This document shows, piece after piece, positions 15,341 through 49,132 of a stretch of 64,000 bases of DNA; position 1 is the first letter of the stretch, and the number at the start of each line of letters is the position of its first letter. The stretch is taken from positions 186,001 to 250,000 of the IMG/VR virus record IMGVR_UViG_3300050821_013430. The stretch is one strand, 5' to 3'. The notes under the pieces were generated by a model, which was not told the DNA's origin, searched no databases, and saw only the letters and a list, made by a program, of their open reading frames with translations. The position numbers and the translations under genes are program-made.

Positions 15341-16606
15341 TTAGGCTTTGATTTCGCTCAATATTTTATCCAAGAACGAATTGCTCCAAGTCCCTTCTCT
15401 TTTTGCCTTGACAATAAAATCCTTCACACCCTCACATTTCTTGTCGTATGTCGAATAGAAGGGTGCGGGGAAAGAGACATTTCTACGCTGAATTTCGAGG
15501 GCAAAATCCTTCTTATTTTTTGACCCCTCCGCACTTATCAGGCTCCAAATCTCCCTATATTCCGCTTCCATTTTTTTGAGCCAAGCCACATATCGTTTTT
15601 TGAGGTCTTGAACGGTCTCGGCGATTTCAGGAGGCATTGCTCCCACAACATCGTCATCCTTTTCGTGAAGGATCAATTCCAAACAATTGCGAGTAGAGGC
15701 GCCCAAACTATCTCGCATCTTATTCAATACGACATAATTTGCGTTCTTGACCTTTATTCGATTGAATTTACCATCCAAAACAACAACGCCTTCTCCGCCT
15801 TGTTCCAAGGGATTTTGGGCATTGACAAATTCGATCACCTTATCGATATTGGATAGGGAATAGGTTTTGACAGTAGGGATATTGACTACTTCCATCTCGG
15901 ATTGAATGTAATGATTGTCAATTGACACTTCTTGTAGGGTGTTGAGGTTTCTTGCGGCTAAGAATACTACTCGACAATCATTATTGCGGATTACGATTTG
16001 ATTGAAGGGGCTGGTGAGTTCAAATACCCAAGTGTAATTTTTATCTAAATAGGAAGTAATCTCCTCGAAGGTATTGCCGGAAGTATCCTTGACCGCCTTC
16101 TCGAAAAGAGTGCGGAAGGTCATTTCCTTCCAACTATCGAGGGGAATATCGGCCTCGGGCACGCTCCGCGTTGAAACTACCCAGCGGTAATTCTCAAACG
16201 GATTTGCCCAGAGAAGAATAAGAGTACCATCTTCCTTATTTTGGACTTTGAGATTGGGATCGCTCCAATCAATTTGGGCAGCCGCACCTTGTCCAAAATT
16301 GTAGAAGCGTCGAAATCCCATTGCGAGCACTACGGTTTCGCCTGGGCAAATGTCATCGTAGCATAAACGATCATTGACCATCTTGGCTTGGGAGGTAAGA
16401 GAGCGGCCATCCTTGGTCGCTAAGATTAGCCCACGGCATTCCTGCACGATAAGATCATCATCTTTGGCCTCGATCTGGTCATAATTCATAGACCAAAAAT
16501 AACCCGCTTTGGCGAAAGAAACATAAATTCCGTGTTCTCGCGCCAGATCGCCGAATGACCTTGTTTCTAAGTATTGCTGAACAAGAAGTTTGTTATTTTG
16601 TTCCAT
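15341..16606 (-). CDS. T4 Rnl1-like RNA ligase
   Basis: ECRGLIL, GFRRFYN, KEDGT (motif I KxDG), FELTSP, EGVVV, RIKVKN. Confidence 0.85.
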   Translation of the reverse strand: MEQNNKLLVQQYLETRSFGDLAREHGIYVSFAKAGYFWSMNYDQIEAKDDDLIVQECRGLILATKDGRSLTSQAKMVNDRLCYDDICPGETVVLAMGFRRFYNFGQGAAAQIDWSDPNLKVQNKEDGTLILLWANPFENYRWVVSTRSVPEADIPLDSWKEMTFRTLFEKAVKDTSGNTFEEITSYLDKNYTWVFELTSPFNQIVIRNNDCRVVFLAARNLNTLQEVSIDNHYIQSEMEVVNIPTVKTYSLSNIDKVIEFVNAQNPLEQGGEGVVVLDGKFNRIKVKNANYVVLNKMRDSLGASTRNCLELILHEKDDDVVGAMPPEIAETVQDLKKRYVAWLKKMEAEYREIWSLISAEGSKNKKDFALEIQRRNVSFPAPFYSTYDKKCEGVKDFIVKAKREGTWSNSFLDKILSEIKA

Positions 16607-17358: not shown

Positions 17359-17760
17359 TTATCCAAAAATTTGTAATGTCTGAAAGAAGTCTATCACATC
17401 TTCCCGATTGTAAATGTCGATCTCAAATGAGTGGGCATCGGAAGCAAATTCTCTTTGCCATCCCTTTTCCGTCCAATATGACATTTCAATAGGATCAGAA
17501 GAGGTTCGTCGCACTTGAATATAGGAGAGTTTGTATTTGCTATCGATGAATAATTCTTGTTCGACAACATTGAATTTACCATCAATGCCATATCTGAAAT
17601 GCAGCGGCCCTTTGCAGCCATCAAAATACCATTTATTTGCTTCGGTATATTTTCTAATGGGCTCTCTGCAAACGGGGCATCCTTCGCGGGTGAGAATGTC
17701 CCAAGGAACGGGGAAGACTGGAATATATGGGATACTCACTGAGACATTAATGGGAAGCAT
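17359..17760 (-). CDS. Hypothetical protein (CxxC; ends FFQTLQIFG)
   Basis: TAATG overlap with upstream gene. Confidence 0.5.
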   Translation of the reverse strand: MLPINVSVSIPYIPVFPVPWDILTREGCPVCREPIRKYTEANKWYFDGCKGPLHFRYGIDGKFNVVEQELFIDSKYKLSYIQVRRTSSDPIEMSYWTEKGWQREFASDAHSFEIDIYNREDVIDFFQTLQIFG

Positions 17761-18068
17761 TATTCTAGGGAACACGCAGCGTCGAAATGATCTTTGCCGC
17801 ATTGAGCACACTTCTCATCCATCAATGATGACCAATCGAGGGATATTGAATTGCTATATGTAGAAGTTCCAAATCCTTCGTCATCGAAATATTTTTTGAT
17901 ACGATCACGATATTTTGGTGGCAAAGAGGCGTCAATAGCATAGGAGACATAGCCTCTTCCTTTGGTGGTGGCATCGAGAATGGTGCCTCTAATTTTGTCA
18001 ATTTCGTTTTTCATTTTGATAAGAAGACTGCGTTTGCTGTTGTTGGCCATTTCTTGGGCAAGTTTCAT
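17760..18068 (-). CDS. Hypothetical, 'DWS' paralog family, C-terminal CAQCGKDH tag
   Basis: Similarity to 24068, 24382 and 24762 ORFs. Confidence 0.6.
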   Translation of the reverse strand: MKLAQEMANNSKRSLLIKMKNEIDKIRGTILDATTKGRGYVSYAIDASLPPKYRDRIKKYFDDEGFGTSTYSNSISLDWSSLMDEKCAQCGKDHFDAACSLE

Positions 18069-19703: not shown

Positions 19704-20306
19704 TCATTCTATACCAACTAATAATAAAGGGTGAGCAATATCAGCATATATAATTTCTATTAGAGTTTTTTCATAATTGCCGGGCCCCGTGCTCATATTT
19801 TTTGCAACCTTTTTGATCGGCACCAACTCAATGCCCAAATCACTAATTCCATTCTTACGGAAAAGAGGTATTTTGAATAAACAATCACTTGTCATAAATG
19901 TGTATTTACCAAATTGGACTTCTAATATTATTTTAATTAAATTAGAATTTAATGAAAGTTCTTTATAAAAATCAGCATCAGAATAAGTTCGTTTAAGTTC
20001 GGATTTTTCTTTTTCTTTTGCTGACAATTTACAAAAATCATCAATAGTTTGCCTATCTGCATTTTTGATTTTTGGACATTTGTAATTTGTTGTCCAGCCA
20101 CATTTAATAAGACCATCAGATATTTTTGCATTCATATCTATTGGACTATAAACTACTGTTCCGGTTCTATTAGAATTACCACCAATGGTGTGTGTTCTAC
20201 ACGATTCTAAATCCACATTAGATAAAGTTGAATTAAGTTCTGTAATAATTGGGCCGCTATCACATAGTCCTTGCATATTAAATGCTTCAAATTTACTTAC
20301 TTTCAT
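19704..20306 (-). CDS. BglII/BstYI-family type II restriction endonuclease
   Basis: DADFYK...LEVQFGKYTFM..D...GIELVP...MSTG...YEK pattern; directly downstream of MTase. Confidence 0.75.
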   Translation of the reverse strand: MKVSKFEAFNMQGLCDSGPIITELNSTLSNVDLESCRTHTIGGNSNRTGTVVYSPIDMNAKISDGLIKCGWTTNYKCPKIKNADRQTIDDFCKLSAKEKEKSELKRTYSDADFYKELSLNSNLIKIILEVQFGKYTFMTSDCLFKIPLFRKNGISDLGIELVPIKKVAKNMSTGPGNYEKTLIEIIYADIAHPLLLVGIE

Positions 20307-21363
20307 CTTCTTTTTTGACTTTCTTGGGATCATAAATCGGAGTATTCATTGCGCGGGTTTTTAGTTCACCTTTCTCCAATAATTCAATTCTTTCTAAGGA
20401 AATATCGATATATTTTTTCTCGATATCACATCCATATCCTTTTCTCTTGTTTTTGAGTGCAGCAATCACAGTAGAGCCCGCACCCAGATAAGGATCAAAA
20501 ACAATATCATTTTCATTAGTAAGGGAAAGAACAAATCTTTCTACTAATTCAACAGGAAATTGACAAGGGTGTTCTGTTTTTTCACAATGATTATGTTTCA
20601 CATTTGGAATGTCCCACACATCGCCAGGATTTTTACCAAGCGGATTACCAGATAATTCCCCTTTGCGTAGTCCTTTGTAATATCTTTTGCCAGGATATTT
20701 AGAAGGAACTCTTACCGGATCAAGATTGAAAATATAATTATTAGTGTCTTTAACAAACCATAAAATGGTTTCATGTCTTCCTGAAAATCTATTTTTACAA
20801 TGTAATCCGTGTTCGAAGTGCCAAATGATCCTATTTTTGAGAGTAAAACCAAGTTTTTTGAAAATAGGATATAAAATAATATCCAATGGAATAACTTCTG
20901 CATCTTTTTTAGAAATAGAATTGCCCACTTGCCAACAAATAGACCCCGTGTCTTTTAGTTTTGTTGCACATTTTGTAATAATTTCTTCTTGAATTTTTAC
21001 ATAGGCATCGAGCGAAGAAATTTTTTCATACTCTTTACCAACATTGTATGGTGGGGATGTAATGATTAGCTGAACTGACTTATTTTCTATTTTATCTAAA
21101 AAATCTAAATTACTACCTTGCTCTACTAAATAATCTGTTAGATTTTGTTTTGAGCAAAATTGTCTATTAGTTTCTTGAAACTTACCATCTATTCCACGAA
21201 TGATAATGGGCGCGGCTTTCTGTTCGGCAAGAGCACCGGCAGCAAGTATAGCTTTATTACGAGTACGATAGTATCGATTAGAGTGGGGCGCCCCCCATAT
21301 TGCTCGTTGCCACCCTCGTTGAGTTTTAGAAACACAAACCGCTTGTATCTTTGATATTTTCAT
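20293..21363 (-). CDS. Beta-class N4-C/N6-A DNA methyltransferase with N-terminal DUF2188-like domain
   Basis: LIITSPPYN, HPCQFP, VFDPYLGAGST; N-terminus GW...TRNKAILAAGALA...IIIRGIDGKFQE. Confidence 0.88.
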   Translation of the reverse strand: MKISKIQAVCVSKTQRGWQRAIWGAPHSNRYYRTRNKAILAAGALAEQKAAPIIIRGIDGKFQETNRQFCSKQNLTDYLVEQGSNLDFLDKIENKSVQLIITSPPYNVGKEYEKISSLDAYVKIQEEIITKCATKLKDTGSICWQVGNSISKKDAEVIPLDIILYPIFKKLGFTLKNRIIWHFEHGLHCKNRFSGRHETILWFVKDTNNYIFNLDPVRVPSKYPGKRYYKGLRKGELSGNPLGKNPGDVWDIPNVKHNHCEKTEHPCQFPVELVERFVLSLTNENDIVFDPYLGAGSTVIAALKNKRKGYGCDIEKKYIDISLERIELLEKGELKTRAMNTPIYDPKKVKKEDESK

Positions 21364-21364
21364 C

Positions 21365-21553
21365 TTATTCCTCGTTTGATTTGCCTAATGTCTTATTGCA
21401 CTGGGCCTGTAAAATATTACGAATAAACTCCGCTCTGCTAATGTATTTCCCCGTCTTTTTCAAATACTGAGAAAACGCATCGTCAATTAGTTGCACCAGC
21501 GAGGGCGTCAATTTTAAAAGATACTGCTCGCTCAATTTTTCAATTTTTTTCAT
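21365..21553 (-). CDS. Ribbon-helix-helix-like DNA-binding protein (copy 1)
   Basis: QYLLKLTPSLVQLIDDAF...ISRAEFIRNIL; homologous to 47551..47718. Confidence 0.6.
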   Translation of the reverse strand: MKKIEKLSEQYLLKLTPSLVQLIDDAFSQYLKKTGKYISRAEFIRNILQAQCNKTLGKSNEE

Positions 21554-21572
21554 TAAAACCTGCCGTTTGCAT

Positions 21573-21590
21573 GATATATACTTATATATC
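21573..21590. promoter_or_regulatory. Perfect inverted repeat GATATATA-CT-TATATATC between divergent genes (candidate operator or divergent promoter)
   Basis: Direct reading of the 71-nt intergenic region. Confidence 0.45.
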
Positions 21591-21624
21591 TAAATATATA
21601 CCTATATTTTGAAAGGAAACTAAT

Positions 21625-22674
21625 ATGGAAACTTTTTGTTGCTCGGTTTGTGCTCGCGATATGCCTCAAACATATAGATGTCGTGGAATGTGTTGTGCCT
21701 GTTATACTCGTCTTAGACGACACGGGGTTATCAGCAAGATAGATAAACCAATACTACCAATTTCTTTAACACCTGAACAATCAGCATATATCAACGGAAG
21801 TTTGCTTGGTGATGGACATATTAATTATTATAGCGGCACCGGAAATGCTTCTTTCCGAAAATTACGCTCACAAAAAGACAAATCATATCTTGAATGGGAA
21901 AGACAATTTCTGATTGATTTCTGCACACCATCCTCTAAGGTTTTTGATAGTTCTATATTTGACACGCGAACAAATAAATATTATTACCATTCACGGTTTC
22001 ATACACGATCATGTAGTTTATTTGGAGAATTATATGAAAAATGGTATCCAAACGGTATAAAAATTGTTCCTCGAGATTTGGAATTAACACCATTAACAAT
22101 GGCGATTTGGTTTTTGGATGATGGCGGAATAAGCATTAAGGGAAATAAGCCGCATCTATTTGAAATAAAAATAGCAACTGATGGATTTTTAGAACAAGAT
22201 GTTGAATTTTTGGCACATTTATTACAAGAACGATACAATGAATATTTTGCCGTTTGCAAACACGAAAAACATTTCATAATAAATGCTGCTACTATGGCCT
22301 CGCGTGCCATCATTAAGGATATTGATCCTTATATTCCAAAAGAAATTATGGAACGAAAAACTATAAAATGGAGAAATTCACTTTCTAAAATAAATGAAGA
22401 CATTTTTCTCGGCGGAAACGGCAAATTGAAAGAACAACGATTTTTACAAAATTTTAATGAGAAATTGCAAAATTTATTTAAAAGTAGTAAAAGTTTTACA
22501 ATTTCTGAAATCGGTGAAATGCTGGAATGTTTCAAATCTGTAAATGGACAAATTTGTATAAATAGAGATAAAGTATTAGGATACTTAGAAAAATATCTAC
22601 AAAATAATTTGATTACACAAGAAAAAATTGGTAGAAAATATGTGTATTCCTTTACCAAAGAATTTATGATTTAA
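21625..22674 (+). CDS. LAGLIDADG homing endonuclease (two-motif, I-SceI-like)
   Basis: YINGSLLGDGHI and MAIWFLDDGGI; N-terminal CxxC...CCAC. Confidence 0.8.
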   Translation: METFCCSVCARDMPQTYRCRGMCCACYTRLRRHGVISKIDKPILPISLTPEQSAYINGSLLGDGHINYYSGTGNASFRKLRSQKDKSYLEWERQFLIDFCTPSSKVFDSSIFDTRTNKYYYHSRFHTRSCSLFGELYEKWYPNGIKIVPRDLELTPLTMAIWFLDDGGISIKGNKPHLFEIKIATDGFLEQDVEFLAHLLQERYNEYFAVCKHEKHFIINAATMASRAIIKDIDPYIPKEIMERKTIKWRNSLSKINEDIFLGGNGKLKEQRFLQNFNEKLQNLFKSSKSFTISEIGEMLECFKSVNGQICINRDKVLGYLEKYLQNNLITQEKIGRKYVYSFTKEFMI

Positions 22675-23606
22675 AAATCAGCATCAGGTGATCCAACTCG
22701 AAAAAGTGGAAGTCCGTTCTCATACACCCATCTACAAATCTGCAACCGGTCATCAATCCAAGCGCATACCTTATACTTCCCCCTGATCTGCTCCTCGAAA
22801 ATTCGTTCTTTTATCAGGACATCTTTTTCTTTGTTGCCACTGGGACGCATAAACAATTCGTACTTCACTTCGGGCAAGTGCTTCTGATAGAAGCGTTCCG
22901 TTGGTGCTCGATCTTTTTCTTCTCGTCCCGAGACAAACAAAACCTTATAGCCTAATTTGAAATAGTTCCGCACGCATTCAATCACGTGCGCGTGCGGTAT
23001 GTCCAAATCCGAGGTGCTCGCGTCATACACATTGCGCCCCGGATGAGGCAAACAAATTGTTCCATCATTATCCACGACGATCGCGGCAGGTAAGCCAGTA
23101 TCTTGCTCCAATGGCCTCCATACCTTCGAGCCTAATTTAGGCGCAAAAACCTCTACCTTTGGTTTGTAATGCTTGAACATTTCCTTCCCGCTCGTCTTCC
23201 ACCATTTCTCAATTACCTTGTCATCTAATCTGGCAGTGCCCGTGCGCTTGGAATTGCGTTCTAAGGCTTCTTCCAAAGAGATATAAAAATGCTTTTCGAT
23301 GACCATTGCATCAACATTGCACTTTTTGACGATTTCACAAGTTTGGGAGAAATGCTTGGGCGCCAAATTTAGATTGTCGATGATGATATTTTTACCAGTC
23401 TTCAATCCTTTTTCGATGAGGAAATTTCGTGTTGCCTCAATGATTTTTTCGTATTCGGAAGACCATACCGATCCATTGAAAGTGGCACGAAGGTCATCGT
23501 TGTTCAGGCGTAAGGTGTTTAGAGGGTCTTTGGCCACCTCTTCCTTAGCCCAAGTCGATTTTCCACTTGATGGTATTCCGACCGTTAGAAATATCTTTCT
23601 TTGCAT
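22671..23606 (-). CDS. pseT: Polynucleotide 5'-kinase/3'-phosphatase (T4 PseT-like)
   Basis: GIPSSGKST P-loop, RLNNDDLR, HAD DNDGT, SGRE, IDDRLQI. Confidence 0.88.
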   Translation of the reverse strand: MQRKIFLTVGIPSSGKSTWAKEEVAKDPLNTLRLNNDDLRATFNGSVWSSEYEKIIEATRNFLIEKGLKTGKNIIIDNLNLAPKHFSQTCEIVKKCNVDAMVIEKHFYISLEEALERNSKRTGTARLDDKVIEKWWKTSGKEMFKHYKPKVEVFAPKLGSKVWRPLEQDTGLPAAIVVDNDGTICLPHPGRNVYDASTSDLDIPHAHVIECVRNYFKLGYKVLFVSGREEKDRAPTERFYQKHLPEVKYELFMRPSGNKEKDVLIKERIFEEQIRGKYKVCAWIDDRLQICRWVYENGLPLFRVGSPDADF

Positions 23607-23619
23607 TTTATTCTCTCTT

Positions 23620-24075
23620 TCAATCAGCAGCCCACTTTATCGCTGTCAATAAAAATCCATCCGCATTTTGCAACAATCTAAATTCGTTATAGTTCGCAAA
23701 TTCTCTGGTAAATTTTTCTACCAAGTCTTGTTCTTCTTGTATCGAAAGTTTGGGCACAAGAGGAATTAAAAGCCTACCATTTCTATATGAATAGCATTGA
23801 TTTGCTCGTATTGTTCTAAACCCATAATCTAATCCAACATAAGCGATAGCGTCATTTTCCCTTGCCTTAACCAATGGAATAGCGCCATATGGCAACTGGT
23901 CGGTGATAATTGCCTTTGGAAAGGTCTCTCGTCGTTTTCGTTCTCGATCAAGAAGATCTTGCAAATTGCTTTCTTTGCAACGCAAGCACTTATAGACTTC
24001 TCCATCTGTATGATACCAATCGCACACGATGGTGAGTTTATTATGACCGAAAAGGCGACACCAAAAGTTATTCAT
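23620..24075 (-). CDS. Hypothetical protein
   Basis: Start trimmed to MNNFWC. Confidence 0.5.
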   Translation of the reverse strand: MNNFWCRLFGHNKLTIVCDWYHTDGEVYKCLRCKESNLQDLLDRERKRRETFPKAIITDQLPYGAIPLVKARENDAIAYVGLDYGFRTIRANQCYSYRNGRLLIPLVPKLSIQEEQDLVEKFTREFANYNEFRLLQNADGFLLTAIKWAAD

Positions 24076-24391
24076 TTTCGTGAAATTGGCCACATTGCGC
24101 ACACGGTACCGGCATCCCACCGCTCCAATCGAGAGTAATCGTTGGCTTGCTGGTATAAGTAAGCCAAAGTCTAACTTTTATTCCCTCATCAGTAAAATAT
24201 TTCACCACCTTGTCAATATCTTGCTGCGACAAATTGAAATTCTCAATCCAATTGTAATGATCTACTTTGGTCTTACCATCCGCAGCGACATTCCACATAT
24301 CTTGTTTGAGATGATCGATTGCTTTTCTCGGTCTATCTTCAATGGCCTTTTTAGTTCCTATGCAAATTGTTTCGAGTAGGCTCATTGACAC
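24068..24391 (-). CDS. Hypothetical, 'DWS' family, C-terminal CAQCGQFH tag
   Basis: KYFTDEGI...LDWS...CAQCGQFH. Confidence 0.6.
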   Translation of the reverse strand: MSMSLLETICIGTKKAIEDRPRKAIDHLKQDMWNVAADGKTKVDHYNWIENFNLSQQDIDKVVKYFTDEGIKVRLWLTYTSKPTITLDWSGGMPVPCAQCGQFHENE

Positions 24392-24771
24392 GCCTCATGT
24401 ACCTCATGACATTGTGGGCAAGTATCTGGATAGGTATTGTTTGATTGCTTCATTTTGTCTGACCAATCAAAATAGACTAAAACATCATTATCCCATTCAG
24501 GATCGAAATCGTTCCAATCATCATCTTCATCATAATTGCAAGAAAGATCATTCACGAAAAATCCCTCATTCTCAAAATATTTCTTGATCTTTTTTCGATC
24601 TTTTTTGGAAAGTTTCTGCCACTTCTTCATTTCACGAAAATTATAGTGAGTTTTTCCTTTGATAGCCTTTTTCTTTATTCCATCAACAATCTTTTGTACT
24701 ATCAATGTATAATGACTATCTTTATTGTCTGCTGACAATTTACAAACCTCATCAATTAAATTCATTGGCAA
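24382..24771 (-). CDS. Hypothetical, 'DWS' family, C-terminal CPQCHEVH tag
   Basis: KYFENEGF...FDWS...CPQCHEVHEAC. Confidence 0.6.
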   Translation of the reverse strand: MPMNLIDEVCKLSADNKDSHYTLIVQKIVDGIKKKAIKGKTHYNFREMKKWQKLSKKDRKKIKKYFENEGFFVNDLSCNYDEDDDWNDFDPEWDNDVLVYFDWSDKMKQSNNTYPDTCPQCHEVHEACQ

Positions 24772-35974: not shown

Positions 35975-36889
35975 TTATTTATCTTTCTTATGCCTTTTTC
36001 TAAGCACTCCGTCTAATATATTTTGCTTAGCACTTAGTGGTCGTAGATTTTCCAATGACCAACATTTCTTGAAATTCTCATCTTCCATAGAAGAATACGG
36101 AAGATCAGATTGAGGAATAATATGATCAATTTGCCAAGTCCAAGTGGCAGGATCATTATCATCCCAAGTATCTACTTTATACATTCCGTGGTTATTTCTA
36201 TTCATCCAAGTATTTTCTCCGATCATTTGAGATGTCAAATGGTCTATAAGTTGATACATAGTATAACCAAGATATTTCATAATAGATTGTTCATATTTTG
36301 AACTATCACTTCTTTTGATCATTCTCCATATAGCATTAGAAAATAATATTCTAAAAGCAAATGCCAAATCATTTTTTCTTCGTTTTCTTCTATTTTTATT
36401 TATTTTTTCTTTGTTCTTATATTGTTCTCTATACTTTTTACCATATGCTCTATGATATTCTCGATTTTGTTGGCGATATTCTTTATGTTTTTTATTTATG
36501 TTTTCTTTATTTGCTTGATAATATTCTTTGGATTGGGCATTTTTGGCTTCTCTATTTTCTTCACGATATTTTTTATGCTGAACAGCAATTTTTTCTTTAT
36601 TTTTTTGATAAGATCGTCTATTTCCGGCATTTAGTTTTTCTTTATTTTCTGCTCTTTTTGCCGCAAGTTTTTCTTCATTTTCTTTTCTATATTTCTTTAC
36701 ACGGACACTAATTTCTTCTTTATGTTCCTGATGATATGTTCTACTATATTGATTTAGTTTTTCTTTATGAGTTGCATTATATATGCGTTTTTGTTCTTTT
36801 CGGCAAGACTTACACACATTTCTACCTTTTTCGAAAAGGTCAGGAGACCCCGACAAATTGCATTTTATACAAATTTTTATATCAGTCAT
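35975..36889 (-). CDS. HNH-family endonuclease with long Y-x-E-x-N-K-E-K repeat helix (paralog 1)
   Basis: N-terminal CIKC...CKSC; C-terminal WQIDHIIPQSDLPY...CWSLENLRPL. Confidence 0.7.
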   Translation of the reverse strand: MTDIKICIKCNLSGSPDLFEKGRNVCKSCRKEQKRIYNATHKEKLNQYSRTYHQEHKEEISVRVKKYRKENEEKLAAKRAENKEKLNAGNRRSYQKNKEKIAVQHKKYREENREAKNAQSKEYYQANKENINKKHKEYRQQNREYHRAYGKKYREQYKNKEKINKNRRKRRKNDLAFAFRILFSNAIWRMIKRSDSSKYEQSIMKYLGYTMYQLIDHLTSQMIGENTWMNRNNHGMYKVDTWDDNDPATWTWQIDHIIPQSDLPYSSMEDENFKKCWSLENLRPLSAKQNILDGVLRKRHKKDK

Positions 36890-37016
36890 TGCAAAATAGT
36901 GTCATTTAGAGGGGCGGAAGAGATGTCTAACCCAGCGCCCAACACTATATATCGCCCAAACCAAGAACGAAGAAACAAAGAGTAATCGCAGTAATGGAAT
37001 GGCAAAATCAATCATC

Positions 37017-38444
37017 TCAATCACCTAACTTATAGACCTTTCCGAAGGGAGCGACAAAATCTCCCTCATTAGTAATTAGCCAGAATACGGGCACCTGAGG
37101 GTTTTTCATCTTGGCCAAATCCTCATCGAGTAATCCGCCATCAGTAATCACGATTAGGAAATCGGCTTGACCCAGGTGCTTCTTATACTCATCGAAGTAG
37201 GATGCGAGCACCGTACCTCCGCGTCCCACCGGTTTCAGGTTTTGCAGAGTCGTCTTATTGAAGCGTTGCAGTTTGATAGCCTTATCCCAATACACTTTGG
37301 CATCGGCATAGACTATGCTTCCTTCGGCTCGTTGGTCTAATGATTGCAACTGCGATACTCCGTAGGCCATATTGTCTTTGGACATTGACATAGAGGTATC
37401 GAGAAGGCAGGCAAATTTGCAGCGCTGATCAATGCGTTTAGGTATTAGCAAGCCTGCAAAGAAAGCACGAGAACGAAAGCGTGTCCAGTCATTTTGAGAA
37501 TGACCATCACGAGATCGAAGCATTTGGGCACGAATAGCGTCCTGAAACCTAATCTTGGGAGCCAATAATGCCCCTAATTCATCTTCCAAGGCTCCCGGCA
37601 CCTTGCCCGCCATTCGTTTGGTCATATCCATCGCACGAGCGATCCGTTTGGCCATTTCTTCTTGGCTTTCCTCGGCGTCCATATGTTCATCAATGGTGCC
37701 CCCAAAATCGAAAACGCTACTATCAGGATACTTGGTTTGCAAATCCAAGAGATACTGGTAGATTTTCTCCGGTGAGCGCATCGCTTCCGGCAGTTTGGGA
37801 TCGGCAAAGAAAAACTTGACCATCTTGGTCTTTTCTTCCATTGCGTCTTTTTCTTGCTGAGTGAGGTCTCGATTTTCTTCCGGATGCGGCATCGGGAGAG
37901 AAGGCATTTCCATATCAGGATCGACCAGAACGGTATCGAAATCATCCGGAATGGCCTTTGGGTCTTTACATAACTCTTCTAATTGACTAAGGGTAAGAAA
38001 GTTGCCAAGTTCCTTCTTGAAGGTAGCGGCAGGGTCTCTACCGCGAAGTTTGAGATCGTCCATTACGGTAAAATTGACCAAATAATCAACAGCGATGTTC
38101 CAAAGGTGAGGATCACGACGACCTCGACGCTGGGCATGCATATACAGGCAGTGCCATGCCTCATGACAACAAATTAATCGTAATCCGAGCAAAGACTTAG
38201 AAAGTATAAAATGGATGTTCCAAAAAAATTTACGGCCTGTTGTTGCGGCAGTGGGAACATGCGTTGTAGCAATATGCTCAACGGGAAACATTAGAGCAAA
38301 TAATAAAGGAGACCCTCCCAAACCAGTTCCAATGGATGATGGTTTAGGATTTAGGCCAAGTTCTAAAAAAATCTTTTCTAATTTCTTCTCAGCCTGACAA
38401 ATGAGATCGGGCTCAATTTTACCAATAATTTTTGAGAATTTCAT
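37017..38444 (-). CDS. DUF2201-type metallopeptidase-like + VWA domain protein
   Basis: PTAAT.G, CHEAWH (HExxH), WNIAVDYLVN; MIDAS DTSMSMS, GRGGT, ITDG. Confidence 0.8.
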   Translation of the reverse strand: MKFSKIIGKIEPDLICQAEKKLEKIFLELGLNPKPSSIGTGLGGSPLLFALMFPVEHIATTHVPTAATTGRKFFWNIHFILSKSLLGLRLICCHEAWHCLYMHAQRRGRRDPHLWNIAVDYLVNFTVMDDLKLRGRDPAATFKKELGNFLTLSQLEELCKDPKAIPDDFDTVLVDPDMEMPSLPMPHPEENRDLTQQEKDAMEEKTKMVKFFFADPKLPEAMRSPEKIYQYLLDLQTKYPDSSVFDFGGTIDEHMDAEESQEEMAKRIARAMDMTKRMAGKVPGALEDELGALLAPKIRFQDAIRAQMLRSRDGHSQNDWTRFRSRAFFAGLLIPKRIDQRCKFACLLDTSMSMSKDNMAYGVSQLQSLDQRAEGSIVYADAKVYWDKAIKLQRFNKTTLQNLKPVGRGGTVLASYFDEYKKHLGQADFLIVITDGGLLDEDLAKMKNPQVPVFWLITNEGDFVAPFGKVYKLGD

Positions 38445-39436
38445 TTCTTACGATGTCTTACTCTATGGACGCCATCTAATATATTTTGTTTAGCATTTAG
38501 CGGTCGAAGATTTTCGAGAGCCCAACATTTCTTGAAATTTTCATCTTCCATCGAAGTATATGGAAGATCGGACTGAGGAATGATATGATCAATATTCCAA
38601 GTCCAAGTAGAAGGGTCATTATCATCCCAGGTTTTTGGATCATATCTTCCGTGATTATTCCAATTCATCCAAGCATTTGAACCAATCCATTGACTTTCTA
38701 TATGGTGTTTCACTTTTTGCTTTGTATATCCCAATATAATAAATGTTTTATCAGACTTGGGAACGCTATTTTTCTTCAAACTATTTATCAATAAGGCCCT
38801 AACCATTCTATGTATAATAATATTTGGATTATTTTTATTTCTATGATATTGTCTTTTAGATATTTCTTTTTTCTTTTCGGAATTTTCTCTCACCCAATTT
38901 TTATTATTTTGTAATTCCTTTTCTTTATTTTTATTGTAATATTCTTTTCTTTTTAGTTTTATTTTTTCTTTATTCTCTTCTCGATATTCTTTATAATGGG
39001 CGCCAATTTCTTCTATATTTTCTTGACGCCATTCTTTTTTGCGGGCCGCTATTTTCTCTTTATTATTTTCTCGATAATTTTTTTGTTGATAAGAAACTTT
39101 TTCTTTATTTTCTTTTCTATATTTTCTTTCACGATCAGCAATATAATCTTTATTTTCTTCTCTATATACGGCAATATTTTCTTTGTTTTTCTGATAATAT
39201 TCTTTATGATATTCTAAAATATATTCTTTATTATTTTCGTAATATTCTTTCTCTCGCGCAGCAATTTTCTCTTTATTGTCTTCACGATATTTTGAATACC
39301 TAATTTTATAGCATACTCGACATTCAGTATTATATTTATTAGTGTCTTTTCTAAAAAAGAAATTTTCTTTTGTAAGTGGCTTGGTCTCACCGCAAACCCG
39401 ACACTTTTGTATTTGTTCTACTGTTTTCTTATTCAT
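38441..39436 (-). CDS. HNH-family endonuclease with repeat helix (paralog 2)
   Basis: CRVC...CRVC; WNIDHIIPQSDLPY...CWALENLRPL. Confidence 0.7.
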   Translation of the reverse strand: MNKKTVEQIQKCRVCGETKPLTKENFFFRKDTNKYNTECRVCYKIRYSKYREDNKEKIAAREKEYYENNKEYILEYHKEYYQKNKENIAVYREENKDYIADRERKYRKENKEKVSYQQKNYRENNKEKIAARKKEWRQENIEEIGAHYKEYREENKEKIKLKRKEYYNKNKEKELQNNKNWVRENSEKKKEISKRQYHRNKNNPNIIIHRMVRALLINSLKKNSVPKSDKTFIILGYTKQKVKHHIESQWIGSNAWMNWNNHGRYDPKTWDDNDPSTWTWNIDHIIPQSDLPYTSMEDENFKKCWALENLRPLNAKQNILDGVHRVRHRKK

Positions 39437-47782: not shown

Positions 47783-49132
47783 ATGCCAGCAAAGAAAACA
47801 ACAGAACAGTTCGTCCAAGATGCTCGTTGTGTGCATGGCGACACCTACGATTACTCTATGGTCATTTATATCAACAGCGCTACAAAAGTGCAGATTGGCT
47901 GCATCCAACACGGGATTTTCTTGCAAACGCCCAACGATCATTTAGGCGGACATGGCTGCAATAAATGTGCCAAAATAATAACTGCTAACAAGAAAAGAAG
48001 AACAAATGATAGTTTTATTGTTATGGCAAACGAAACTCATGGCAATAAATATGATTATTCACTTGTGGAATATTGTGATAGTCTTACAAAAGTAAGTATT
48101 AAATGCTCTAAACACGGAGTATTTAGTCAGACCCCAGCGAGACATCTTTCTGGTCAAGGGTGTCCTAAATGTGGCAGAGAAAAAGCAAATGATAGCATGC
48201 GCAAGGAACTATCTGATTTTATCAACGAAGCGATAAGCATACATGGCACTACATATGATTATTCATTAGTTGAATATATTACAACACATAAACCAGTGAA
48301 TATAATATGCAAAATTCACGGAAATTTCCAACAGACGCCACACGGTCATTTAGAAGGCCGTGGGTGCCCAAATTGTGGCTATGAATGCGTATCACAAAAA
48401 CTTTTATCTAATACAGGTGCCTTTATACAGAAGGCACAAGAAAAATATGGAAATCTATATGATTATAGTTTTGTTGAATATATCAGTAGTCATATACCGG
48501 TGTTAATTGTATGCCAAAAACACGGACTTTTTAGTCAAAAACCAATAACACATTTACAATATGGTTGTGTGCAATGTGGTTATGATACGACCAGTGAAAA
48601 ACTCTCATATACACTTAAAGAATTTGTGGCGAAGGCAGATATTATACATCATGATAAATATGACTATTCCAAATCAATATATGTGGGGTCTCGATCCGAG
48701 ATTTGCATTAAATGCCCGCAACATGGAGAATTTTGGCAGAAACCCGTAACTCATCTCAGGGGTTCTGGGTGTCCCAAATGTGGGAAATCTATTTCCAATG
48801 TAGAAACCATGTGGCTTGATACCGTTGGTGTCCCAAATGACAAAAATCATAGACAAGTATTGATTAGGATTACCGATGCACAATCTAAAAAGAAGCGTAT
48901 TATAGTTGATGGATTTATGCCGGAAACCAATACGATTTACGAATTTTTAGGAGATTTCTGGCACGGAAATCCATCAGTTTTTGATCTAAATACTATCAAT
49001 GCTGCCACTCATACAACTTTTGGAGAGTTATATGAAAATACTATTGAACGAGAGCGACTAATCAAACAAGCAGGGTATAATGTTGTCAGTATTTGGGAAA
49101 ATGAATGGCATAGAATAAAAAATGCTATGTGA
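47783..49132 (+). CDS. Putative homing endonuclease with 5 DUF723-like repeats and PD-(D/E)XK-like domain
   Basis: Five CxxHGxFxQxPxxH...CxxC repeats; IVDGF...YEFLGDFWHGNP. Confidence 0.72.
   Translation: MPAKKTTEQFVQDARCVHGDTYDYSMVIYINSATKVQIGCIQHGIFLQTPNDHLGGHGCNKCAKIITANKKRRTNDSFIVMANETHGNKYDYSLVEYCDSLTKVSIKCSKHGVFSQTPARHLSGQGCPKCGREKANDSMRKELSDFINEAISIHGTTYDYSLVEYITTHKPVNIICKIHGNFQQTPHGHLEGRGCPNCGYECVSQKLLSNTGAFIQKAQEKYGNLYDYSFVEYISSHIPVLIVCQKHGLFSQKPITHLQYGCVQCGYDTTSEKLSYTLKEFVAKADIIHHDKYDYSKSIYVGSRSEICIKCPQHGEFWQKPVTHLRGSGCPKCGKSISNVETMWLDTVGVPNDKNHRQVLIRITDAQSKKKRIIVDGFMPETNTIYEFLGDFWHGNPSVFDLNTINAATHTTFGELYENTIERERLIKQAGYNVVSIWENEWHRIKNAM

What the first reader, a model, noticed from the sequence alone, without database searches (positions are those of the whole stretch)
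19704..21363. Apparently intact BglII/BstYI-family R-M pair on a phage, with a DUF2188-like domain fused to the MTase
Seen: overlapping MTase (SPPY, beta-class) and REase genes in an AT-rich segment, plus a ~65-aa MTase N-terminal extension matching the DUF2188 pattern (GW...T.xxAI..A..LA.....I.I.G.DGK.QE). Established: phages commonly carry orphan MTases, while complete type II pairs are less common. Inference: used for host DNA degradation or competitor exclusion; the role of the fused domain is unknown.
Basis: partly seen in the sequence, partly recalled or inferred. Interest (0 to 1): 0.6.

Follow-up and report, generated by a model that had tools for sequence, protein, structure and literature searches.

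The report
BstYI-like restriction-modification cassette on huge phage
A 473-kb soil phage carries an apparently intact three-gene restriction-modification cassette (small regulator, methyltransferase, BstYI-type endonuclease). Its methyltransferase has an unusual extra DUF2188 domain at the front, a modest new twist on a well-known kind of system.

Summary
On the minus strand, a 356-aa beta-class SPPY methyltransferase (20293-21363) is followed by a BstYI/BglII-family endonuclease (19704-20306, or 20333 for the longest ORF) that overlaps it. All family-invariant catalytic residues are present. MTase residues 1-69 belong to DUF2188 by Pfam (just above cut-off), profile comparison and two structure predictions. 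No in-frame start codon exists before codon 146, so the fusion is obligatory.

New findings:
- **A third gene.** A 62-aa ribbon-helix-helix-like protein (21365-21553) sits directly upstream. The small-gene/M/R trio recurs in two other phage-like contigs, without DUF2188.
- **Unusual fusion.** It was absent from 10 long bacterial orthologues scanned and from the 120 best database homologues.
- **Accessory island.** The cassette is low-GC (30-32% against 45%), lies beside a LAGLIDADG homing endonuclease, and occupies a variable slot between PNKP and RNA ligase.
- **Site depletion.** RGATCY, BstYI's site, is specifically depleted in the genome (237 observed, 445 expected), the strongest of 32 comparable classes.

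Best reading: a working, mobile type II R-M module, probably cutting RGATCY and methylating N4-cytosine. It would protect phage DNA and cut unmodified host or competitor DNA. The DUF2188 domain's role is unproven; its charge (+10) suggests nucleic-acid binding. This is a new variant of a known kind.

The parts
21365..21553 (-). 62-aa small protein, first gene of the cassette. Putative ribbon-helix-helix-like dimeric regulator.
   Evidence: Its stop lies 1 nt before the MTase ATG. Homologues of 39-63% identity sit in the same position before M-R in L091 and L092. The homodimer model scores 0.57 against a best control of 0.00, with antiparallel pairing of residues 9-15. Atlas leads point to RHH_1/DUF3950. 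No Pfam or PDB sequence hit was found.
21554..21624 (.). 71-bp AT-rich intergenic region between the cassette and the divergent LAGLIDADG gene. Putative promoter/operator.
   Evidence: It shares a TAGATATATA element and a GGCAG..TT.AATG start context with the region upstream of the L092 homologue. The promoter scan was not above chance. This is a lead only.
20293..21363 (-). 356-aa DNA methyltransferase, beta-class N4/N6 family, with a fused N-terminal DUF2188 domain.
   Evidence: Pfam PF01555 scores E=1.1e-58 and PADLOC MTase_II 7.7e-85. A GAGGA Shine-Dalgarno lies 5 nt before the ATG. It is the only PF01555 gene in the genome.
21157..21363 (-). MTase residues 1-69: the DUF2188 domain (Pfam match 13-66 = 21166-21327), net charge +10.
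   Evidence: Searches support the domain assignment. GC is 0.43-0.48 against 0.32 for the core. No in-frame ATG/GTG/TTG occurs between codons 2 and 145.
21046..21057 (-). Catalytic motif IV, SPPY (residues 103-106).
   Evidence: Read from the sequence and aligned to DPPY of M.MboIIA and M.RsrI.
20470..20499 (-). SAM-binding motif I, FDPYLGAGST (residues 289-298).
   Evidence: Read from the sequence and aligned to M.MboIIA and M.RsrI.
19704..20306 (-). 200-aa BstYI-family PD-(D/E)XK restriction endonuclease. The longest ORF starts at 20333.
   Evidence: Pfam PF09195 scores 30.2 bits. BstYI 1sdo matches at E=8.7e-18. PHROG 28079 scores 2.7e-18 and PADLOC REase_II 6e-19. It overlaps the MTase stop by 14 nt.
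19914..19973 (-). Catalytic D112 ... E129-x-Q131 (200-aa numbering; D121/E138/Q140 in the 209-aa ORF).
   Evidence: These residues align with BstYI D119/E128/Q130 and are invariant in 81 family members.
21625..22674 (+). Free-standing LAGLIDADG homing endonuclease, a divergent neighbour and part of the same low-GC island.
   Evidence: Pfam LAGLIDADG_2 scores 5e-31 and PADLOC HEase 2.7e-24. GC is 0.317.

Best explanation
This is a functional, horizontally mobile type IIP restriction-modification cassette of three co-transcribed, translationally coupled genes on the minus strand: a small RHH-like dimeric regulator, a DUF2188-fused beta-class SPPY methyltransferase, and a BstYI-family endonuclease.

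**What the sequence shows:**
- The gene order and overlaps.
- The intact motifs.
- Family membership of all three domains.
- The obligatory nature of the fusion.
- The accessory, low-GC status of the island.
- The conserved M>R linkage of this MTase core with this REase family in bacteria.

**What is inferred:**
- The endonuclease cuts R^GATCY, or a very similar GATC-centred site. Probability about 0.65.
- The methyltransferase makes N4-methylcytosine at the same site. It protects the 237 RGATCY sites left in the phage genome, on packaged DNA and on newly replicated DNA.
- Unmodified host chromosome, or co-infecting phage or plasmid DNA, is cut once the endonuclease is made. This supplies nucleotides and/or excludes competitors. 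The same methylation also shields the phage from host BstYI-like systems.
- The RHH-like protein autoregulates the operon from the 71-bp upstream region.
- The very basic DUF2188 domain acts as an accessory nucleic-acid-binding or tethering module that keeps the methyltransferase on DNA. This is the weakest step, probability about 0.3.
For: **Identity and intactness.**

**Cognate pairing.** In 76 of 80 bacterial loci with a BstYI-like REase, an orthologue of this MTase core (50-66% identity) sits directly upstream in M>R order. Stop and start overlap or abut (commonly -1 or -4 nt). Burkholderia phages BcepIL02 and DC1 carry the same pair, annotated methyltransferase plus restriction endonuclease II.

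**Cassette conservation in phage-like contigs.** L091 has 62 aa-M287-R196, and L092 has 61 aa-M339-R187 next to a GIY-YIG endonuclease.

**Specificity.**
- K134 (BstYI K133) is invariant, and position 173 is T where BstYI has S172.
- The three RGATCY word classes are the three most depleted NGATCN hexamers (O/E 0.46, 0.52, 0.58; ranks 37-55 of 4089).
- RGATCY at 0.53 is the lowest of 32 R/Y-flanked palindromic-core classes; the next is 0.78.
- There are no RGATCY sites among 19 GATC in the 6-kb island.

**Need for the MTase.** It is the only PF01555 MTase in the genome. No D12/Dam, C5 MTase or TGT genes were found.

**Fusion is obligatory.**

**DUF2188 assignment.**
- Pfam 23.3 and 26.1 bits.
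- hhalign probability 68%, E=4.8e-5.
- The four near-invariant family columns W18, T34, A38 and G60 are kept.
- The ESM Atlas's own model has TM 0.66-0.71 to DUF2188 clusters.
- The AF2 model has pLDDT 85-93 over residues 11-50, and its nearest clusters are nearly all DUF2188.

**Basic charge.** +10 against a family median of +1.

**RHH-like dimer.** Score 0.57, best of 3 controls 0.00. Calibration: 20 of 30 true homodimers and 1 of 23 monomers reach the mark. The three runs agree in at least 95% of contacts, and partner pLDDT is at least 76.

**Accessory island.**
Against: - No enzymatic, methylome or expression data exist. The only sequencing run that holds the locus is a DNA soil metagenome.
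- The RGATCY depletion may have been imposed by host enzymes rather than by this REase. A recently acquired low-GC cassette cannot easily explain a genome-wide bias.
- The REase is far less conserved than the MTase among phage-clade cassettes (35-53% against 74-80%). That pattern would also fit relaxed selection on R.
- The phage-clade REases carry an 8-residue insertion between D and E-x-Q, and T for S at the BstYI S172 position. The specificity may therefore differ from BstYI.
- m4C against m6A cannot be decided from sequence. The closest solved relatives are m6A enzymes.
- The DUF2188 fold has no convincing solved analogue (best Z 5.4), so the DNA-binding idea rests on charge and on a Phasin+DUF2188 architecture analogy only.
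- The 62-aa protein has no Pfam or PDB sequence match.
Confidence: 0.6

Rival explanations
1. The selected function is anti-restriction. The phage keeps the cassette for its methyltransferase, which pre-methylates RGATCY and so defeats the BstYI-like R-M systems that are common in soil bacteria. The endonuclease is a passenger, weakly active or decaying.
For:
- Genome-wide RGATCY depletion indicates long exposure to such enzymes.
- The MTase is much better conserved than the REase in the phage clade.
- Orphan MTases are common in phages: 841 phage records match this MTase but only 4 match the REase.
Against: - The REase ORF is intact and keeps every residue that is invariant in 81 family members.
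- M-R linkage with overlapping genes is kept in at least four independent phage-like contigs.
- A useless nuclease would normally be lost quickly.
Confidence: 0.2
2. The cassette is a selfish mobile element that spreads between phage genomes together with homing endonucleases. It persists by post-segregational killing or by exclusion of cassette-free genomes, with no net benefit to the phage.
For: - The cassette GC is 30-31% in three different genomic backgrounds of 39-45% GC.
- A LAGLIDADG endonuclease lies next to it here and a GIY-YIG endonuclease next to it in L092.
- It sits in a variable slot between PNKP and RNA ligase that holds unrelated genes in relatives L008 and L009.
Against: This rival does not exclude a benefit to the phage, so it overlaps the best explanation mechanistically. 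No target-site or homing evidence was obtained, and no cassette-free isolate of the same phage was found: the second record is 100% identical.
Confidence: 0.15
3. The DUF2188 domain is an autoregulatory or operator-binding domain, as in M.SsoII-type methyltransferases whose N-terminal domain represses their own promoter. It is not a general DNA tether.
For: - There is precedent for N-terminal regulatory extensions on type II MTases (my knowledge: M.SsoII, M.EcoRII, M.MspI).
- The N-terminus of this phage MTase clade is a hot spot for small added modules: none in L091, CxxC...CxxC in L092, DUF2188 here.
- The domain is strongly basic.
Against: - The cassette already has a dedicated small RHH-like gene in the regulator position, kept with and without the extension.
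- DUF2188 is not an HTH and has no known DNA-sequence-specific role.
- No repeated operator was demonstrated.
Confidence: 0.12
4. The DUF2188 match is fortuitous. Residues 1-69 are a lineage-specific leader without a defined fold or function.
For: - The Pfam score is only 1.3 bits over the cut-off.
- phmmer of residues 1-85 against 1.84 billion representatives found only two repeat proteins, both spurious.
- The AF2 model was built on an alignment that I seeded with DUF2188 sequences, so its likeness to DUF2188 is partly by construction.
Against: - Independent lines agree: 26.1 bits in the six-frame search and hhalign E=4.8e-5 over 56 columns.
- All four near-invariant family columns are kept.
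- The ESM Atlas's own single-sequence model, which is independent of my alignment, is nearest to DUF2188 clusters at TM 0.66-0.71.
Confidence: 0.08

Closest known systems
BstYI restriction-modification system (R.BstYI, PDB 1sdo/1vrr/2p0j; recognises R^GATCY)
   Same: - The REase is homologous over nearly its full length (E=8.7e-18).
- The catalytic D/E/Q triad and the QFGKY lysine are identical.
- The same MTase core sits directly upstream in bacterial homologues.
- The genome is specifically depleted of RGATCY.
   Different: - Only about 30% identity.
- An 8-residue insertion between the catalytic D and E-x-Q gives a BamHI-like D-x16-E spacing.
- T replaces S at the BstYI S172 position.
- It is carried by a phage.
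- The MTase has a DUF2188 N-terminal domain.
- It is preceded by an RHH-like gene.
Burkholderia phages BcepIL02 gp41/gp42 and DC1 (Lessievirus): methyltransferase plus restriction endonuclease II
   Same: Phage-borne M>R pair of the same two families. MTase core is 61% identical and REase 28-29% identical.
   Different: - Their MTase has no DUF2188 extension; the match starts at residue 85 of the query.
- The REase belongs to the bacterial BstYI-like branch, without the insertion.
- No homologous small upstream gene is annotated.
- They are 62-kb temperate-type podophages, not a 473-kb phage.
Cassettes in metagenomic phage-like contigs L091 (JGI 3300045970) and L092 (Logan ERR12076151)
   Same: The same three-gene order, small protein-M-R. 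The small protein is 39-63% identical, the MTase 74-80% and the REase 35-41%. The cassette is low-GC. L092 also has an adjacent homing endonuclease.
   Different: L091's MTase has no N-terminal extension. L092's has a CxxC...CxxC module instead of DUF2188.
Controller (C) protein-regulated type II R-M systems (BamHI, BglII, PvuII) and M.SsoII-type self-regulating MTases
   Same: A small DNA-binding-type gene, or an N-terminal MTase extension, is associated with the operon and would set the timing and level of M and R. This comparison rests on my knowledge of these systems.
   Different: Classical C proteins and the M.SsoII N-domain are helix-turn-helix. Here the small protein is RHH-like, not HTH (no Pfam HTH hit), and the MTase extension is DUF2188.
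Chlorovirus type II R-M systems (e.g. CviAI/CviAII of PBCV-1)
   Same: Lytic large dsDNA viruses that encode complete type II R-M pairs. They are thought to degrade host DNA while their own genome is methylated (my knowledge; not tested here).
   Different: Eukaryotic-algal viruses with other enzyme families. No evidence was obtained here for virion packaging or early host DNA degradation.

Membership tests
Type II (IIP) restriction-modification system | Separate, adjacent MTase and REase genes. | tested here: met
   M 20293-21363 and R 19704-20306 lie on the same strand with a 14-nt overlap. M>R linkage is conserved in 76 of 80 bacterial loci.
Type II (IIP) restriction-modification system | Site-specific cleavage that is blocked by the cognate methylation. 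| not testable with these tools
   This needs enzyme assays or methylome data. The only indirect evidence is the RGATCY depletion.
BglII/BstYI/BamHI endonuclease family (Pfam PF09195) | HMM match above the gathering score, and homology to a solved member. | tested here: met
   30.2 bits against 26. BstYI E=8.7e-18, BamHI E=0.0063.
BglII/BstYI/BamHI endonuclease family (Pfam PF09195) | Catalytic Asp ... Glu-x-Gln/Glu of the PD-(D/E)XK core. | tested here: met
   D112, E129 and Q131 align with BstYI D119, E128 and Q130 and are invariant in 81 sequences.
BstYI isoschizomer (R^GATCY specificity) | Recognition residues equivalent to BstYI K133 and S172. Their roles are recalled from the BstYI structure papers, not verified here. 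| tested here: inconclusive
   K is conserved. S172 is T here, whereas it is S in 79 of 81 sequences. Genome RGATCY O/E of 0.53 is the lowest of 32 classes, but host enzymes could be the cause.
Beta-class N4/N6 DNA methyltransferase (Pfam PF01555) | HMM match, with motif IV (S/D-PP-Y) N-terminal to motif I (FxGxG). | tested here: met
   E=1.1e-58. SPPY lies at 103-106 and FDPYLGAGST at 289-298.
N4-cytosine-specific MTase | Transfers methyl to N4 of cytosine; SPPY/SPPF is typical. | not testable with these tools
   SPPY is present. The best solved matches are DPPY m6A enzymes, and the m4C enzymes score lower.
DUF2188 (Pfam PF09954) | HMM match above the gathering score. | tested here: met
   23.3 bits against 22 and 26.1 bits. 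This is borderline.
DUF2188 (Pfam PF09954) | Family-conserved columns and the beta-beta-beta-alpha-beta fold. | tested here: met
   W18, T34, A38 and G60 are kept. hhalign probability is 68%, E=4.8e-5. TM is 0.66-0.75 to DUF2188 clusters. AF2 pLDDT is 85-93 over residues 11-50.
Ribbon-helix-helix (CopG/Arc/MetJ) regulators, for the 62-aa protein | Sequence-profile membership. | tested here: not met
   No RHH family appeared in Pfam at E up to 10, and no PDB sequence match was found.
Ribbon-helix-helix (CopG/Arc/MetJ) regulators, for the 62-aa protein | Homodimer with paired N-terminal beta-strands followed by two helices. | tested here: inconclusive
   The predicted homodimer scores 0.57 against controls of 0.00, with contacts 12-12, 11-13 and 9-15. 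Atlas leads to RHH_1/DUF3950 are weak. This is a model only.
Classical R-M controller (C) protein | Xre-type helix-turn-helix domain. | tested here: not met
   No HTH family hit was found for the 62-aa protein or its homologues.

The most novel reading that the evidence does not exclude
DUF2188 is an uncharacterised small domain that comparative genomics has repeatedly placed in defence and conflict operons. In this reading it is a portable nucleic-acid-engaging module, and the phage has recruited it to a restriction-modification methyltransferase. Together with an RHH-type (non-HTH) controller, this would define a phage-specific regulatory architecture for type II R-M. The MTase N-terminus would act as a swap site for accessory modules (none, zinc-ribbon-like or DUF2188) that tune how fast or where phage DNA is protected.
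Probability: 0.2. Interest if true: 0.6.

Novelty: new variant of a known kind. Interest (0 to 1): 0.45.

Why it matters
- **Complete R-M pairs on phages are uncommon.** In the phage collection, 841 records match this MTase but only 4 match the REase. This example sits in a 473-kb soil phage and looks fully functional.
- **A handle on DUF2188.** The domain has no known function, yet here it is attached to an enzyme whose activity is easy to assay. Comparing the MTase with and without residues 1-69 is a direct way to learn what it does.
- **A possible new controller type.** The conserved RHH-like first gene suggests a non-HTH kind of R-M controller.
- **A testable specificity.** The specific RGATCY depletion predicts the enzyme's recognition site in advance.
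- **Overall weight.** Apart from these points the system is an ordinary member of a well-understood class.

Tried and rejected
- **Megablast of the locus** against 50,697 phage records found no match. The phage has no close cultured relative; rIIA is at most 34% identical.
- **AF2 of the whole MTase without an alignment** was useless, with pLDDT 35.
- **phmmer of residues 1-85** against 1.84 billion representatives gave only two repeat-protein artefacts.
- **Fold searches of the DUF2188 model:**
  - PDB gave nothing convincing. Foldseek E was at least 0.36; the best VIA Z was 5.4 (actin-like half-domains) and AcrIF5 scored Z 5.2, all under the Z 8 level the tool calls unreliable.
  - BFVD gave only weak DUF1508 and HicB-like leads.
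- **The 62-aa protein** gave no Pfam or PDB sequence hit. A sub-threshold caulimovirus coat match was judged spurious.
- **Promoter and terminator scans** were not above shuffled expectation.
- **P0006** looked like a second N-terminally extended MTase (360 aa). It is a TAG read-through of a separate 70-aa ORF plus a 281-aa MTase, and I rejected it as a fusion.
- **Ten bacterial orthologues with long N-terminal ORFs** had no DUF2188. One extension was an IS1595 transposase insertion.
- **Upstream genes of bacterial BstYI-like pairs** are heterogeneous; no common regulator was seen.
- **The six-frame search for PF09195** in the phage's own genome did not ring anywhere, including the controls. 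That is a tool limitation, not absence.
- **Literature search for BstYI recognition residues** found nothing usable. Those residue roles are therefore cited from memory only.
- **Sequencing runs.** Only one DNA run (soil metagenome, probably the source) holds the locus and no RNA run does, so read laying was not used and expression is untested.
- **Hypermodification.** I considered phage DNA hypermodification as an alternative form of self-protection. No TGT/DpdA, Dam or C5 MTase gene was found, and the one thymidylate-synthase-family gene (336 bits) looks canonical. This is not excluded.
Full report
**Setting.** The window is bases 186001-250000 of a single 472,749-bp IMG/VR virus record. CheckV rates it 100% complete, and no terminal repeats were found. 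The genome GC is 45%. The window encodes rIIA, NAD-dependent ligase, RNA ligase, PNKP, helicase and several HNH endonucleases, so this is a huge tailed phage. It has no close cultured relative: megablast found nothing, and the best rIIA match is 34% identical, to an uncultured 462-kb phage. The only public run that holds the locus is a soil metagenome. A second IMG/VR record of 221 kb is 100% identical over 12.6 kb, so it is the same phage.

**Checking the observation.** Two minus-strand ORFs occupy the stated interval: 20293-21363 (356 aa) and 19704-20333 (209 aa).

- **MTase.** The first ORF is a DNA methyltransferase. Pfam N6_N4_Mtase scores E=1.1e-58 over residues 97-323, and PADLOC MTase_II scores 7.7e-85. 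SPPY lies at residues 103-106 and FDPYLGAGST at 289-298, which is the beta-class order.
- **REase.** The second ORF is a BglII/BstYI/BamHI-family endonuclease. Pfam scores 30.2 bits against a cut-off of 26. BstYI 1sdo matches at E=8.7e-18 over residues 31-208 and BamHI at E=0.0063. PHROG "restriction endonuclease II" scores 2.7e-18.
- **REase start.** The gene most likely starts at ATG 20306, giving 200 aa and a 14-nt overlap with the MTase stop. That is the form held in the protein database, and it matches BstYI's 203 aa.
- **N-terminal extension.** MTase residues 13-66 hit Pfam DUF2188 at 23.3 bits against a cut-off of 22, and at 26.1 bits in the six-frame search.
- **AT-richness.** GC is 0.32 for the MTase core and 0.30 for the REase.

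**Is the endonuclease intact?** D121, E138 and Q140 (209-aa numbering; D112, E129 and Q131 in the 200-aa protein) align with BstYI D119, E128 and Q130. I aligned 81 sequences: this protein, its closest homologue and 79 bacterial homologues. In that alignment D, E, Q, the QFGKY lysine, the MS-G motif and about 20 further positions are invariant, and all are kept here.

The phage protein and its nearest relatives form a divergent branch. These relatives are P0122 (52% identity), L091 (41%) and L092 (35%). The branch carries an 8-residue insertion between the catalytic D and E-x-Q, and mostly T instead of S at the position of BstYI S172.

**Is the DUF2188 assignment real?** The HMM score is borderline, so I tested it independently.

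- phmmer of residues 1-85 against 1.84 billion representatives found only two repeat proteins, both spurious. The domain therefore has no close relatives.
- hhalign against eight Bacillota DUF2188 domains gave probability 68% and E=4.8e-5 over residues 11-66.
- In a 33-row alignment with DUF2188 domains from two phyla, the four near-invariant family columns (W18, T34, A38, G60) are all present in the phage protein.
- The ESM Atlas's own single-sequence model of this exact protein is structurally nearest to DUF2188 clusters, at TM 0.66-0.71.
- An AF2 model built on my alignment is confident over the domain, with pLDDT 85-93 for residues 11-50 and a beta-beta-beta-alpha-beta topology. Its nearest Atlas clusters are nearly all DUF2188, at TM 0.63-0.75. 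This last result is partly built in by the alignment I supplied.

The second refutation condition is not met either.

The fusion is obligatory. There is no in-frame ATG, GTG or TTG between codon 1 and codon 146, which lies beyond motif IV. A GAGGA Shine-Dalgarno sits 5 nt before ATG 21363.

**How unusual is the fusion?**

- The MTase core is extremely common. All 8000 scored database candidates passed E<=1e-10, and the 120 best are about 60-80% identical to the core and mostly 270-340 aa long. None carries PF09954.
- The closest relatives (80% identity, 284-290 aa) start at about residue 70 of the phage protein.
- Ten bacterial orthologues with long upstream ORFs have no DUF2188.
- In 702 bacterial genomes sampled from two phyla, 52 have a DUF2188 match at the thresholds used. 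All matches over the Pfam cut-off lie in open frames of 219 aa or less.
- Atlas clusters show DUF2188 fused to other partners (DUF2283, phasin, DUF2382/PRC), but none to an MTase among those returned.
- The segment encoding the domain has GC 0.43-0.48 against 0.32 for the core, consistent with a separate origin.
- One apparent second case, P0006 (360 aa), is a TAG read-through artefact.
- L092's MTase does have a true in-frame N-terminal CxxC...CxxC module.

The N-terminus of this phage MTase clade therefore appears to be a site where small modules are added.

**A third gene and a conserved cassette.** A 62-aa ORF lies directly upstream at 21365-21553, and its stop is 1 nt before the MTase ATG. 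Homologues of 39% and 63% identity occupy the same position in front of M-R in two phage-like metagenomic contigs, L091 and L092.

Its sequence has the strand, helix, G-x-x-S-R, helix pattern of ribbon-helix-helix proteins. No Pfam or PDB sequence match was obtained, and the Atlas gave only weak leads to RHH_1 and DUF3950 clusters.

A homodimer prediction passed its controls. The score was 0.57 against a best control of 0.00. In calibration, 20 of 30 true homodimers and 1 of 23 monomers reached the mark. The three runs agreed in at least 95% of contacts, and partner pLDDT was at least 76. The tightest contacts pair residues 9-15 antiparallel around residue 12, which is the RHH ribbon geometry. 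I call the protein RHH-like and do not file it as a family member. It is not a classical HTH controller protein.

The 71-bp upstream region shares a TAGATATATA element with L092. That is only a lead, because promoter scans were at chance level.

**The pair is cognate.** In 76 of 80 bacterial loci retrieved with the REase, an orthologue of this MTase core (50-66% identity) lies directly upstream. The order is M>R, and stop and start overlap or abut. Burkholderia phages BcepIL02 and DC1 carry the same pair, with M 61% and R 28-29% identical. It is annotated there as methyltransferase plus restriction endonuclease II, without the extension.

**Predicted specificity and an independent genomic signal.** BstYI cuts R^GATCY (my knowledge). 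In the phage genome, the three RGATCY word classes are the three most depleted of the ten NGATCN classes:

| Word class | O/E |
|---|---|
| AGATCT | 0.46 |
| GGATCC | 0.52 |
| AGATCC/GGATCT | 0.58 |

- These words rank 37-55 of 4089 hexamers. The half-matching RGATCR classes are enriched, at 1.27-1.39.
- Among 32 classes of the form R-core-Y or Y-core-R with a palindromic 4-mer core, RGATCY is the clear outlier: 237 observed against 445 expected, O/E 0.53. The next lowest is 0.78.
- The non-palindromic AGATCC/GGATCT class is depleted as well, so this is not general palindrome avoidance.
- The 6-kb island has 19 GATC but no RGATCY, and the cassette has 5 GATC and none.

RGATCY-specific restriction has therefore shaped this genome. 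The data cannot say whether the pressure came from this enzyme or from host isoschizomers.

237 sites remain. The genome has no other recognisable DNA MTase: there is one PF01555 gene and no D12/Dam, C5 or TGT genes. If the REase is active, the fused MTase is what must protect the genome.

**Genomic context.**

- The cassette and the divergent LAGLIDADG homing endonuclease (21625-22674; Pfam 5e-31) lie in a low-GC stretch.
- That stretch sits between PNKP (22671-23606) and RNA ligase (15341-16606).
- In two related phage contigs (PNKP 58-60% identical), the same interval is 2.1 or 3.3 kb of unrelated genes.
- The homologous cassettes in L091 and L092 are also about 30-31% GC, in backgrounds of about 39%.
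- L092's cassette is flanked by a GIY-YIG endonuclease.

The cassette is an accessory, mobile module of the phage gene pool.

**Mechanism.** My best reading is a working type IIP R-M operon. Identity has probability about 0.9, and the functional narrative as a whole about 0.6.

- Packaged phage DNA arrives already methylated.
- The MTase, probably an N4-cytosine enzyme given SPPY, keeps replicating DNA protected.
- The REase cuts unmodified host or competitor DNA.
- The same methylation defeats host BstYI-like systems.
- The RHH-like dimer probably autoregulates the operon.

The DUF2188 domain is very basic, with net charge +10 and pI 11 against a family median of +1. DUF2188 also occurs fused to a phasin in place of what is a DNA-binding tail in Pseudomonas PhaF (architecture; the PhaF comparison is from my knowledge). 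I therefore favour, weakly (about 0.3), an accessory nucleic-acid-binding or tethering role.

Published comparative genomics places DUF2188 in defence-associated operons, but its function is unknown (10.1101/2022.04.27.489752; 10.64898/2025.12.03.692087). The fold has no convincing solved analogue.

**Rivals.**
- The MTase is the selected anti-restriction function and the REase is a passenger.
- The cassette is a selfish element moving with homing endonucleases.
- The extension is an M.SsoII-like autoregulatory domain.
- The DUF2188 match is chance.

**Verdict.** This is a new variant of a known kind: an ordinary BstYI-family R-M pair, made more interesting by an obligatory and so far unique DUF2188-MTase fusion, a conserved non-HTH small first gene, and a genome-wide RGATCY depletion that predicts the specificity.

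Noticed in passing
whole genome G000 (window = 186001-250000): Some palindromes are avoided far more strongly than RGATCY: GCCGGC 0 observed against 74.7 expected, CTCGAG 7 against 91, GAATTC 23 against 123. Among 4-mers, CTAG has O/E 0.32, TTAA 0.36 and AGCT 0.39. This suggests heavy exposure to several host restriction systems.
   Followed up: partly
window 21625-22674 (+); L092 1212-2084 (-): A free-standing LAGLIDADG homing endonuclease lies divergent from the cassette. The homologous cassette in L092 sits beside a GIY-YIG/NUMOD3 endonuclease and a second N6_N4 MTase. The cassette may move together with homing endonucleases.
   Followed up: partly
window 15341-16606 and 22671-23606: An RNA ligase and a polynucleotide kinase-phosphatase (an RNA-repair pair) flank a variable island of about 6 kb. 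Related phage contigs L008 and L009 keep both genes but have 2.1 or 3.3 kb of unrelated genes between them.
   Followed up: partly
window 17760-18068, 24068-24391, 24382-24771 (all minus strand): Three small ORFs (102-129 aa) look paralogous. They share a KKYF..EGF stretch and a C-terminal C-x-Q-C-(G)-x-x-H motif. Function is unknown.
   Followed up: no
window 36001-37000, 38001-39000, 48001-49000: Other low-GC kilobase bins (0.31-0.36) lie at or next to HNH endonuclease genes (37017-38444, 47783-49132). Low-GC patches in this phage seem to mark mobile endonuclease insertions.
   Followed up: no
L004 757-1839: Database protein P0006 (360 aa, called with TAG=Q) is a read-through. Under the standard code it is a 70-aa CxxC-containing ORF followed by a 281-aa MTase. 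This may be a mis-assigned genetic code in the source annotation.
   Followed up: yes
L002 1174-1686; contig of P0007 3807-4382: In two other contigs, the closest REase homologues are followed directly by a NUDIX hydrolase gene. That gene is absent downstream of the cassette in this window.
   Followed up: no
L006/L007 (IMGVR_UViG_3300021407_000383, 221 kb): A second IMG/VR record is 100% identical to the window over 12.6 kb. It is the same phage assembled twice, or a fragment of it, so it gives no independent support.
   Followed up: yes
L093, L097, L098, L102 (Bacillota loci): In Bacillota, DUF2188 often forms the C-terminal half of proteins of about 120-160 aa. Their N-terminal half starts MPW..DYP..KNL, a recurring two-domain architecture.
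   Followed up: no
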